Virus record (IMG/VR): IMGVR_UViG_3300028676_000003
Coordinates: 186,001 to 250,000 of that record
Length of the DNA stretch: 64,000 nt
Strand: one strand, 5' to 3'
Shown here: piece after piece, positions 42,804 to 43,407 of the stretch
Layout of the letters: every line of letters begins with the position of its first letter
How positions within the stretch are numbered: the first letter of the stretch is position 1
The notes under the pieces: generated by a model
Databases searched by the model: none
What the model saw: only the letters and a program-made list of their open reading frames with translations
What the model was told of the DNA's origin: nothing
Program-made: the position numbers and the translations under genes

Positions 42804-42878
42804 GGTTCGATAGCTTTAATTGGTCAGAGCAGCGGACTCTAAATCCGAAGGTTGTGGGTTCGAACCCCACTCGAATCA
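42804..42878 (+). tRNA. Amber suppressor tRNA (anticodon CTA)
   Basis: Acceptor GGTTCGA/TCGAATC, arm GCGGA-CTCTAAA-TCCGA (CTA at 42839-42841), T-arm GTGGG-TTCGAAC-CCCAC; own promoter at 42784. Confidence 0.9.
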
Positions 42879-43056
42879 CAAACAATACCAAATGGAAAAA
42901 TTTATAGTTTTATTTATCATAGCAATTATTGCAACATTTTTTTGTCTATTAAGATTATCTAATGTAAATAAAGAGACTATTTCTAGAATTAATTCGTTTG
43001 ATATTGACAAATTTAAAAAATTGAATATATTTATAAACAAAGATAAAACAAATATC

Positions 43057-43407
43057 ATGAAGTAGATTAACAATCAAAAATTAAGAGTTGTCACAAGACG
43101 TGACTTATCAATTGCTTATCAAGCAGTTCAATCAGCGCATGCCGCTATCGATTTCCAACACGAACATCCTGTTGAAGCGAAAGAATGGCAAACATATTCA
43201 AACTACTTAGCGGTTCTTACCGTTGCTGATGAACAATCACTAATTAAATTAATTACAAAAGCTATCCTTACTGGTGTCAAGCATACAGTGTTCCGTGAAC
43301 CTGATATTGACAATCAAATAACTGCTGTTGCTTTTGAACCAACTGAACAAGCTAAAAAATTAACTAGTTCATGTCCATTATTAGGAAAGGAGTTGGAAAA
43401 TGCTTAA
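43057..43407 (+). CDS. Peptidyl-tRNA hydrolase (Pth2 family) with in-frame TAG at codon 3; missed by ORF track
   Basis: ATG AAG TAG then 113 open codons: 'KLRVVTRRDL..AYQAVQSAHAA', 'FREPDIDNQITAVA'; no internal Met. Confidence 0.8.

What the first reader, a model, noticed from the sequence alone, without database searches (positions are those of the whole stretch)
42804..43407. Amber suppressor tRNA beside a Pth2 gene that needs amber read-through
Seen: a tRNA with CUA anticodon and its own promoter lies about 180 nt upstream of a Pth2-family frame starting ATG AAG TAG ATT, with no downstream Met. Long structural genes contain no in-frame TAG and several genes still end in TAG (12746, 13582, 33475, 50251), so this is not genome-wide recoding. 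Inference: TAG is used as a conditional gate, with Pth2 made when suppression outcompetes RF1. The upstream TM ORF from 42892 is in the same frame, so a membrane-anchored Pth2 fusion is also possible. The anticodon loop is one base from Lys(CUU) and A73 fits, but the charged amino acid cannot be determined here.
Basis: partly seen in the sequence, partly recalled or inferred. Interest (0 to 1): 0.85.

Follow-up and report, generated by a model that had tools for sequence, protein, structure and literature searches.

The report
Phage suppressor tRNA gating amber-interrupted genes
A jumbo phage carries an amber-suppressor tRNA next to a Pth2-like gene that can only be translated by reading through a UAG at its third codon, and this pairing is kept in about a hundred related phages, so the stop codon looks like a built-in translational switch rather than damage.

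Summary
A canonical tRNA with anticodon CUA lies at 42804-42879. It sits 177 nt upstream of ATG AAG TAG (43057-43065), which runs in frame into a complete Pth2-fold domain (43066-43404). No canonical start codon follows the TAG for 74 codons.

The decisive result is conservation. All 97 assessable homologous loci in IMG/VR have an in-frame TAG just before the domain, 95 of them with an ATG 1-8 codons upstream. So do three huge-phage genomes and Tenacibaculum phage pT24. The base after the TAG is a purine in 67 of 68 contexts. dN/dS behind the TAG is about 0.14. A same-strand tRNA-CUA lies within 3 kb in 80 of 98 loci. TAG still ends about a dozen genes, so this is not whole-genome recoding.

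- A conserved 9-residue leader ORF (44072-44101) has TAG at codon 3 and a Pro-Pro-stop, RAPP-like end. Its 3' end base-pairs with the start region of the next gene.
- A lineage-specific TAG sits at codon 36 of gene 53121-53792.

The membrane-anchored fusion is not conserved. The inserted amino acid remains unknown. I found no published description.

The parts
42749..42777 (+). Sigma-70-like promoter (TTGAAA-17-AATAAT) in front of the suppressor tRNA
   Evidence: 10 of 12 matches, second best site in 42300-44700. This is a consensus match only.
42804..42879 (+). tRNA with anticodon CUA (amber suppressor): class I, A73, no encoded CCA
   Evidence: Homologous position in relatives.
42892..43062 (+). 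57-codon ORF with a hydrophobic N-terminus, in frame with Pth2 and ending at the same TAG; lineage-specific
   Evidence: A tblastn search finds it only in the window's own phage, L004/L005.
43004..43031 (+). Sigma-70-like promoter (TTGACA-16-TATATT) for the Pth2-like gene, lying inside the TM ORF
   Evidence: 11 of 12 matches, best site in the region. The -35/-10 pattern is conserved at the same place in relatives.
43057..43065 (+). The gate: ATG AAG TAG (start codon, one sense codon, amber codon)
   Evidence: Conserved as ATG-(1-8 codons)-TAG in 95 of 97 loci. The base after TAG is a purine in 67 of 68 contexts.
43066..43407 (+). Pth2-like coding region (113 codons plus TAA)
   Evidence: Pfam PTH2 31.9 bits. 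Profile against PDB hits 2zv3 at 1.6e-10. AlphaFold2 pLDDT 93.6. Foldseek TM 0.74-0.81 to Pth2 structures. dN/dS 0.14.
43400..43663 (+). 87-aa ORF of unknown function whose ATG overlaps the Pth2 stop (ATGCTTAA); probably co-translated
   Evidence: Conserved directly behind Pth2 in 35 loci. No Pfam, PHROG or Atlas lead.
44072..44101 (+). Amber leader mini-ORF: ATG AAA TAG ATT CTT AAC AAA CCG CCT TAA (M K amber I L N K P P stop)
   Evidence: Conserved in 44 of 95 loci against 1 on the reverse strand, 5 with an internal TAA and 1 with an internal TGA. Further R-G/A/S-P variants.
44096..44115 (+). 5' strand of a long-range helix, covering the last leader codon, the stop and the next 14 nt
   Evidence: Same-locus controls.
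44156..44176 (+). 3' strand of the helix, ending 6 nt before the ATG of the next gene
   Evidence: In relatives the 3' strand ends between -25 and +12 nt from the next start codon, with different sequences on both strands.
44183..44551 (+). 122-aa ORF of unknown function, the gene downstream of the amber leader
   Evidence: Homologues follow the leader in 16 loci, and three other families take its place elsewhere. No family match.
53121..53792 (+). Gene of PHROG family 4301 with an in-frame TAG at codon 36 (53226-53228)
   Evidence: Homologues carry ACA (Thr) or AAA (Lys) at that codon.

Best explanation
The phage carries a small 'amber regulon' driven by its own suppressor tRNA. Ribosomes start the Pth2-like gene at ATG 43057 and meet UAG at codon 3. 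They then either terminate, or drop off with a dipeptide, or continue if the phage tRNA(CUA) decodes the UAG. The enzyme is therefore made only in proportion to the activity of that tRNA relative to release factor 1. Placing the gate at codons 2-9 means a failed attempt wastes only a tiny peptide, and the inserted residue lies outside the folded domain. The A/G-U context after the UAG suits suppression.

The same tRNA also controls a second target. A 9-residue leader ORF (44072-44101) has UAG at codon 3 and a Pro-Pro-stop (RAPP-like) end. Its stop region pairs with the translation start region of the next gene. Only a ribosome that has read through the UAG reaches that end, pauses there, and can open the helix.

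Shown here: the sequence features, their conservation, the tRNA linkage, the Pth2 fold and the helix covariation. Inferred: that read-through happens, that ribosomes stall at the leader end, and why a Pth2-like enzyme is the regulated product. One reading of the last point is that the enzyme clears short peptidyl-tRNAs generated by suppression and by arrested leader translation.
For: - Early in-frame TAG with an upstream ATG in 95 of 97 IMG/VR loci at 45-100% protein identity, and in LR756500.1, LR756501.1, LR745206.1 and pT24.
- No canonical start between the TAG and the domain in nearly all loci.
- dN/dS 0.14, with dS up to about 2.
- The base after the TAG is a purine in 67 of 68 contexts, and the next base is U in 62 of 68.
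- Shine-Dalgarno sequences are spaced for the upstream ATG in L002, L025, L028 and L031.
- The Pth2 genes end in TAA or TGA, never TAG.
- A same-strand tRNA-CUA lies within 3 kb in 80 of 98 loci, and it is the commonest tRNA there, 85 of 264.
- Distant homologues without the TAG (ZPAH1, Xoo-sp13, Lak-B7) have no adjacent tRNA-CUA. L089 lacks the in-frame ATG and also lacks a tRNA-CUA among its 15 tRNAs.
- The amber leader ORF is specific to the coding strand and to TAG: 44 loci against 1, 5 and 1 in the controls.
- The leader helix has a mean longest perfect run of 11.0 against 5.8 in same-locus controls. Both strands vary between loci, and the helix always ends next to the next start codon.
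Against: - There is no expression, proteomic or aminoacylation data.
- In cluster C mycobacteriophages the codon after the TAG is GTG with a well-spaced Shine-Dalgarno, so the gene can be started without read-through. L100 has ATG after the TAG.
- ATT, the commonest codon after the TAG, is a rare but real bacterial start codon.
- The window's own leader ends in NKPP, not the RAPP or RGPP shown to arrest ribosomes.
- The canonical Pth2 'GK' lysine is missing and 'DAG' is 'EPD' in this family, so peptidyl-tRNA hydrolase activity is not assured.
- Both promoters look like host-type promoters, so the gate does not obviously act as a late-gene timer.
Confidence: 0.78

Rival explanations
1. The TAG is not decoded. 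AUG-AAG-UAG is a two-codon minigene or decoy, and the enzyme is started independently or by re-initiation at the next codon (ATT here, GTG in mycobacteriophages).
For: Catera and Myrna have ATG/GTG TAG GTG, with the Shine-Dalgarno 7 nt from the second GTG, and are annotated from it. L100 has TAG ATG. ATT follows the TAG in 42 of 68 contexts. From established knowledge, two-codon minigenes such as lambda bar are linked to peptidyl-tRNA hydrolase biology.
Against: The following codon is GTA, GTT, ACG, ACA, ACT, AGC, GCT, CTT or AAA in many loci. Shine-Dalgarno spacing fits the upstream ATG in L002, L025, L028 and L031. This model does not explain the tight linkage to a tRNA-CUA. It also does not explain the same ATG-N-TAG-ATT design in the leader ORF, whose codons after the TAG show synonymous variation, CCG/CCA and AGA/CGA.
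Confidence: 0.1
2. The TAGs are neutral by-products of carrying a suppressor tRNA (early or residual stop-codon recoding) and have no regulatory role.
For: The TAG at 53226 is lineage-specific and sits where relatives have Thr or Lys. This fits the published model in which suppressor tRNAs 'detoxify' nonsense codons (bioRxiv 10.1101/2021.08.26.457843).
Against: Neutral TAGs would not stay within the first codons of one gene family, and of one leader ORF, across divergence that saturates synonymous sites. They would not keep a purine after them in 67 of 68 cases. No general recoding is seen.
Confidence: 0.07
3. The main product is a membrane-anchored fusion of the upstream TM ORF (from 42892) and Pth2, made by read-through of the TM ORF's stop.
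For: The two share a frame and the same TAG. Eukaryotic Pth2 is membrane-anchored (established knowledge).
Against: The TM ORF is found only in this phage. Most relatives have in-frame TAA just upstream of the ATG. The best promoter of the region lies inside the TM ORF, and in relatives the tRNA abuts that promoter.
Confidence: 0.03
4. The Pth2-like gene is a decaying pseudogene.
For: It has an in-frame stop at codon 3 and no alternative start.
Against: dN/dS is 0.14. The protein has 11 invariant residues. The model is confident at pLDDT 93.6. Every relative carries the same 'defect'.
Confidence: 0.01

Closest known systems
Stop-codon recoding in phages with suppressor tRNAs (code 15 Lak and crAss-like phages; Borges et al., bioRxiv 10.1101/2021.08.26.457843; PMC9523058)
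   Same: The phage encodes a tRNA-CUA, carries in-frame TAG in its own genes, and read-through is proposed as a translational regulator.
   Different: Here TAG remains a normal stop for about a dozen genes. Only 3 in-frame TAGs occur in 64 kb. Two of them are fixed at codon 3 of one enzyme family and one leader peptide, and they are physically linked to the tRNA. The recoded Lak-B7 homologue has no TAG at this place.
prfB (release factor 2) autoregulation through an early in-frame UGA
   Same: An early in-frame stop codon in a translation-related gene makes output depend on the competition between termination and an alternative decoding event.
   Different: prfB uses a +1 frameshift and senses its own product. 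Here the frame is unchanged, a dedicated tRNA does the decoding, and no feedback from the product is shown.
RAPP/RGPP-type ribosome arrest leader peptides (ApdA, ApdP, SecM-like; PMC7897499, PMC10951233, PMC12992588) and ermC-type leader control
   Same: There is a short upstream ORF ending in R/K-x-P-P or R-G-P. Its 3' end pairs with the start region of the next gene.
   Different: The leaders are only 7-12 residues long, carry an amber codon at position 3-4, and end directly at a stop codon. Arrest is not tested, and the window's version is NKPP. The downstream genes are of unknown function, not secretion components.
Archaeal/eukaryotic peptidyl-tRNA hydrolase Pth2 (PF01981; 2zv3, 3erj, 1q7s), already noted in jumbo phages (PMC7824862)
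   Same: The fold and length match, and the K-x-V-R-D-L and Q..HA motifs are present.
   Different: This is a divergent phage-only subfamily. It has a 2-residue deletion removing the 'GK' lysine and has 'EPD' in place of 'DAG'. The canonical phage Pth2 of XacN1 scores 116 bits and has no TAG.
Lambda bar minigenes and Pth
   Same: A two-codon ORF (AUG-NNN-stop), of the kind that produces short peptidyl-tRNAs, is associated with a peptidyl-tRNA hydrolase.
   Different: The bar minigenes are free-standing and toxic in Pth-deficient hosts. Here the minigene is the 5' end of the hydrolase-like ORF itself.

Membership tests
Pth2 peptidyl-tRNA hydrolase (PF01981) | Sequence match above the curated cut-off | tested here: met
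   31.9 bits against a cut-off of 23. The family profile hits 2zv3 at 1.6e-10.
Pth2 peptidyl-tRNA hydrolase (PF01981) | Pth2 alpha/beta fold | tested here: met
   AlphaFold2 pLDDT 93.6, pTM 0.86. Foldseek top 13 hits are all Pth2/Bit1, TM 0.73-0.81.
Pth2 peptidyl-tRNA hydrolase (PF01981) | Conserved active-site lysine of the 'GK' motif and aspartate of the 'DAG' motif (assignment of these residues is from memory of the S. solfataricus work) | tested here: inconclusive
   In the profile alignment 'GK' falls on 'GY' next to a 2-residue deletion, and 'DAG' aligns with the invariant 'EPD'. The acid is kept as Glu and the lysine is not.
Pth2 peptidyl-tRNA hydrolase (PF01981) | Hydrolysis of peptidyl-tRNA | not testable with these tools
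   Needs an enzyme assay.
Amber suppressor tRNA | Canonical cloverleaf with anticodon CUA, U33 and a purine at position 37 | tested here: met
   The anticodon loop is CUCUAAA.
Amber suppressor tRNA | Is aminoacylated and decodes UAG on the ribosome | not testable with these tools
   Indirect support only: conserved in-frame TAG targets lie next to it.
tRNA-Pyl (ARAGORN's label) | Atypical tRNA-Pyl architecture: short D-loop without G18G19 and a 3-nt variable loop (from established knowledge) | tested here: not met
   The tRNA has a standard D-loop with GG, a 5-nt variable loop and a TTCGAAC T-loop. The label is only ARAGORN's name for any CUA anticodon.
Bacterial initiator tRNA reading UAG as a start codon | 1:72 mismatch and three G-C pairs at the bottom of the anticodon stem | tested here: not met
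   G1-C72 is paired, and the stem ends G29-C41, G30-C40, A31-U39. An in-frame ATG precedes the TAG in 95 of 97 loci.
TAG-recoded (code 15) phage | In-frame TAG in a large share of genes, and TAG not used as a terminator | tested here: not met
   12 plus-strand ORFs end in TAG. ORFs up to 1214 aa have none inside. There are 3 in-frame TAGs in 64 kb. The flanks of relatives are likewise unsplit.
RAPP-type arrest leader peptide | C-terminal RAPP/RGPP-like motif in a short ORF upstream of the regulated gene | tested here: inconclusive
   Relatives have RAPP, RGPT, KAPP, RPP, RGP and RAP ends. The window's copy ends NKPP.
RAPP-type arrest leader peptide | Leader 3' region pairs with the translation start region of the downstream gene | tested here: met
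   Helices of 12-20 bp end between -25 and +12 nt from the next start codon. They exceed same-locus controls in 20 of 26 loci.
RAPP-type arrest leader peptide | Ribosome stalling at the motif | not testable with these tools
   Needs toeprinting or ribosome profiling.

The most novel reading that the evidence does not exclude
Suppressor tRNAs of standard-code jumbo phages are dedicated trans-acting translational regulators with their own small regulon. One target is a Pth2-like enzyme gated by an amber codon at codons 2-9. The other is a new kind of leader-peptide switch, in which the ribosome reaches an arrest-type (R-A/G-P-P) end, and so unmasks the downstream start site, only after reading through an amber codon. 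This would give these long-unexplained tRNAs their natural targets. It would also be a natural counterpart of the amber-suppression switches used in synthetic biology.
Probability: 0.5. Interest if true: 0.9.

Novelty: new variant of a known kind. Interest (0 to 1): 0.85.

Why it matters
Many large phages that use the standard genetic code carry amber-suppressor tRNAs with no known target. The XacN1 authors say so explicitly (PMC5852040). This module supplies a conserved target.

It also shows that gene callers systematically miss or truncate the gene. In pT24 the CDS is truncated. In mycobacteriophages the gene is annotated from the codon after the TAG, and in Catera the tRNA-CUA is labelled tRNA-Arg.

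The finding points to a compact, portable translational switch made of one tRNA, one stop codon and optionally a 9-residue leader. The switch is testable in culturable systems such as Tenacibaculum phage pT24 and Mycobacterium phages Bxz1, Catera and Myrna.

It also offers a plausible first step on the route to full stop-codon recoding in phages. The window contains one extra, lineage-specific in-frame TAG that fits this idea.

Tried and rejected
- **Near-identity DNA search against GenBank phages:** no match.
- **tRNA identity by similarity:** hits scatter over Lys, Trp, Asn, Asp and Arg tRNAs and are not informative.
- **XacN1, which has two tRNA-CUA:** its Pth2 (ORF295) is the canonical type with a normal start, so it is not a member of the amber family.
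- **Xoo-sp13, RsoM2USA and Phosso:** each has a tRNA-CUA with no Pth2-like frame within 4 kb.
- **Motif searches in the window:** TAGATTAA is not enriched as a plain DNA motif, 5 hits against about 7 expected. TATATTTATA is only weakly enriched, 36 against 25.
- **RNAalifold on the leader region:** it found no convincing consensus because large indels break the alignment. The helix was found with duplex folding instead.
- **Function of ORF87, ORF122 and the three other gene families behind the leader:** no Pfam, PHROG or Atlas lead.
- **First structure job:** I rebuilt the alignment without them.
- **Scan of 185,579 cellular genomes:** only 5 hits, all on MAG contigs that look like mis-binned jumbo phage contigs.
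- **Eight literature searches:** no description of the module. The library lacks most subscription journals, so prior description cannot be excluded.

Full report
**What is in the window.** The window is AT-rich (about 33% GC) and phage-like, with 21 tRNA genes. Across 40066-46404 it is identical to two IMG/VR jumbo-phage contigs of 274 kb and 368.5 kb.

The tRNA with anticodon CUA at 42804-42879 is a strong, canonical class I tRNA. Rfam scores it 61.2 bits. It has a 7-bp acceptor stem, G18G19, a standard T-loop, a 5-nt variable loop, A73 and no encoded CCA. ARAGORN's label 'tRNA-Pyl' is only its name for a CUA anticodon, and the architecture is not that of tRNA-Pyl. It is not initiator-like either: G1-C72 is paired and there are only two G-C pairs at the foot of the anticodon stem.

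177 nt downstream, ATG AAG TAG (43057-43065) runs in frame into 113 codons that end at TAA 43405-07. Those 113 residues pass the Pfam PTH2 cut-off, with the match starting at profile position 2. The family profile finds solved Pth2 structures. An AlphaFold2 model (pLDDT 93.6) superposes on archaeal Pth2 and human Bit1 at TM 0.74-0.81. No ATG, GTG or TTG follows the TAG in frame for 74 codons.

**Conservation of the amber codon.**
- A tblastn search of GenBank phages put three huge uncultured phages on top, and all three begin the same way: ATG AAG TAG ATT, ATG TCG TAG ATT and ATG AAC AAT TAG ATT.
- Two scans of IMG/VR gave 29 and then 80 loci, out of 368 relatives detected.
- In all 97 loci that can be assessed, the first in-frame stop upstream of the domain is TAG. 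In 95 of them an in-frame ATG lies 1-8 codons before it. L096 was mis-scored by my script and corrected.
- Tenacibaculum phage pT24 has ATG AAA TAG ATA, and its GenBank CDS is truncated because of it.
- The frame behind the TAG is under purifying selection. Median dN/dS is 0.14 over 36 pairs, while dS reaches 0.6-2. The TAG has therefore been kept through divergence that saturates silent sites.
- The genes themselves end in TAA or TGA, never TAG.

**Where translation starts.**
- The codon after the TAG is ATT in 42 of 68 distinct contexts. Elsewhere it is GTA, GTT, ATA, ACG, ACA, ACT, AGC, GCT, CTT or AAA, so a start at that codon is not a conserved option.
- The nucleotide context is conserved instead: the next base is a purine in 67 of 68 cases, followed by U in 62 of 68. 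From established work on E. coli amber suppression, a purine there favours read-through.
- Where a Shine-Dalgarno sequence exists, it sits 5-9 nt from the upstream ATG (L002, L025, L028, L031).
- A -35/-10 pair precedes the gene (TTGACA-16-TATATT, 43004-43031) and is conserved in position in relatives. In most relatives the tRNA's 3' end abuts this promoter.
- The 57-codon TM ORF between the tRNA and Pth2 occurs only in this phage. Most relatives have TAA in that frame just before the ATG. A TM-Pth2 fusion could arise here as a by-product, but it is not the conserved design.

**Linkage to the tRNA.**
- A tRNA-CUA lies within the 3-kb flanks in 80 of 98 loci, always on the same strand. Several of the rest have cut flanks.
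- When upstream, the tRNA lies a median of about 69 nt before the start of the Pth2-like domain. It is the commonest tRNA in these loci, 85 of 264.
- More distant homologues with an ordinary start have no adjacent tRNA-CUA: Aeromonas phage ZPAH1, Xoo-sp13 (where the domain is fused behind another) and Lak-B7.
- L089, whose upstream ATG is out of frame and which has a TTG three codons after the TAG, has 15 tRNAs but no CUA.
- The family is absent from cellular genomes except for a few MAG contigs that look like mis-binned phage.

**An ambiguous lineage.** About 200 cluster C mycobacteriophages (Bxz1, Catera, Myrna) have ATG/GTG TAG GTG with a tRNA-CUA 100-250 nt downstream. In Catera that tRNA is annotated as tRNA-Arg. 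There the Shine-Dalgarno is 7 nt from the GTG after the TAG. The gene can probably start without read-through, and the gate may be vestigial or bypassed.

**Not genome-wide recoding.** TAG ends 12 plus-strand ORFs against 67 ending in TAA. ORFs up to 1214 aa have no internal TAG. The flanks of relatives show no TAG-split genes.

**A second amber element.** The pattern ATG NNN TAG ATT occurs again at 44072. It opens a 10-codon ORF, M K amber I L N K P P stop, between a tRNA-Cys and ORF 44183-44551.
- The mini-ORF is conserved at the same place in relatives. Synonymous or conservative changes occur after the TAG (CCG/CCA, AGA/CGA/AAA), which indicates that it is translated through the amber codon.
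- Across the loci, 44 of 95 carry such an ORF with Pro at the second-last position. The controls give 1 locus on the reverse strand, 5 with an internal TAA and 1 with an internal TGA.
- Typical peptides, with x marking the amber codon, are MKxIIRAPP, MKxIIRGPT, MNxIKAPP and MEHxIIRPP. Further variants end in RGP, RAP or RSP, or carry IRGPT internally.
- RAPP and RGPP are published ribosome-arrest motifs (PMC7897499, PMC10951233, PMC12992588).
- In nearly every locus the leader's last codons, its stop and the next 12 nt or so form a 12-20-bp helix. The partner segment ends between -25 and +12 nt from the next gene's start codon, sometimes including it. The sequences differ on both strands between loci.
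- The longest perfect run averages 11.0 against 5.8 for same-locus control windows. In 20 of 26 loci it is reached by at most 2.3% of controls.
- In the window the strands are 44096-44115 and 44156-44176.
- The downstream genes fall into four families of unknown function.
- This is the anatomy of an ermC/secM-type leader switch, with the added feature that the ribosome reaches the end of the leader only after reading UAG.

**A third in-frame TAG.** Gene 53121-53792 (PHROG 4301, function unknown) has TAG at codon 36. Both halves are homologous to uninterrupted relatives, which carry Thr (ACA) or Lys (AAA) at that codon. The following base is T, unlike the conserved gates. This looks like a nonsense codon tolerated because the suppressor is present, as in the published model for the origin of recoding. 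It cannot settle which amino acid is inserted.

**The protein and the tRNA.** The Pth2-like family has 11 invariant residues (K5, R11, D13, H25, F30, W41, L59, E78, P79, D80, T86). It lacks the 'GK' lysine of canonical Pth2 through a two-residue deletion, and it has 'EPD' where canonical enzymes have 'DAG'. The fold is certain but the activity is not.

The 69 distinct linked tRNA-CUA sequences are all class I. Their anticodon loop is CUCUAAA in 54. The discriminator base varies: A in 42, U in 11, G in 10 and C in 6. Only one encodes CCA. By E. coli rules, a class I amber tRNA with A73 and U35 tends to accept lysine. This is a rule of thumb, and the variable discriminator suggests the inserted residue differs between phages. 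That fits a gate placed outside the folded domain.

**Mechanism.**
- Shown: the features above and their conservation.
- Inferred: ribosomes start at the ATG, and at UAG the phage tRNA competes with RF1 and with drop-off. Only read-through yields the enzyme, and probably the overlapping ORF87, which is conserved in 35 loci.
- Why a Pth2-like enzyme is gated is open. My preferred reading is that the enzyme is needed in proportion to suppressor activity. Read-through, two-codon abortive products and Pro-rich arrested leaders would all generate short peptidyl-tRNAs.
- Two alternatives are a homeostatic loop in which the enzyme acts on the suppressor tRNA's own acylated form, and a sensor of RF1 capacity in the manner of prfB.
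- Both promoters look like host-type promoters, so a simple early/late timer is less likely.

**Literature and novelty.** PTH2 in jumbo phages is known (PMC7824862), and so is stop-codon recoding with suppressor tRNAs. Neither source, nor the other searches, mentions an amber codon in the Pth2 gene or an amber-containing leader. The XacN1 paper states that no target of its suppressor tRNAs could be found. I rate this a new variant of a known kind, gene-specific cis-linked amber gating in standard-code phages. The amber-dependent leader is possibly a new regulatory device. Nothing here is experimental.

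Noticed in passing
window 44072-44176, and the same position in L006-L097: A conserved 7-12-residue leader ORF has TAG at codon 3-4 and an R/K-x-P-P or R-G-P end. Its 3' end pairs with the start region of the next gene. It looks like an arrest-peptide switch that needs amber suppression.
   Followed up: yes
window 53121-53792 (TAG at 53226-53228): A PHROG 4301 gene is interrupted by an in-frame TAG at codon 36. 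Relatives have Thr or Lys there. The ORF list shows only the C-terminal 160 aa.
   Followed up: partly
window 43400-43663: An 87-aa ORF of unknown function has a start that overlaps the Pth2 stop. It is conserved directly behind Pth2 in 35 loci, so it is probably part of the gated unit.
   Followed up: partly
window 44647-45765 and the tRNA array 38978-53076: The phage encodes a CCA-adding enzyme (PolyA_pol head domain, 118 bits). The suppressor tRNA, and 68 of 69 related ones, lack an encoded CCA.
   Followed up: partly
L006, L008-L013, L016, L040: between the leader ORF and the next gene: Direct and inverted copies of CTTGGACA (TTGGACA-N-TGTCCAA) lie inside the long-range helix. The window has a different hairpin at 44124-44138. 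These could be an inner RNA hairpin or a protein-binding site.
   Followed up: no
window 48902-48992, 49169-49253, 50674-50757, 51373-51460: Several ARAGORN tRNAs of class I isotypes (His, Ile, Asn) are 84-88 nt long and score low in Rfam (31-51 bits). They may carry insertions or introns, or be degenerate.
   Followed up: no
L033 (Catera NC_008207.1) 3114-3187; L034 (Myrna) 2966-3037; L035 (pT24 LC168164.1) 2453-3403: GenBank annotation problems. Catera's tRNA-CUA is annotated as tRNA-Arg, and Myrna's is labelled tRNA-Ser. The pT24 Pth2-like CDS is truncated at its 5' end because of the TAG. In pT24 and L030 the domain carries a C-terminal extension of about 200 aa.
   Followed up: partly
L105 (Lak-B7 MK250026.1) 856-928: A tRNA with anticodon UUA (ochre-type) sits about 0.6 kb upstream of the Lak Pth2-like gene, which has no early TAG although Lak phages are TAG-recoded.
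   Followed up: no
L106-L109 (genome contigs): Jumbo-phage contigs carrying this module are binned into archaeal MAGs (Methanobacterium, Pacearchaeota, Thermoplasmatota). One 425,361-bp contig has the same length as an IMG/VR viral contig, so these are likely binning errors.
   Followed up: no
L002 (LR756501.1) about 1594: The 735-kb phage's Pth2-like gene has a second in-frame TAG inside the domain (CCA TAG ATT). That phage may use TAG as a sense codon more widely.
   Followed up: no
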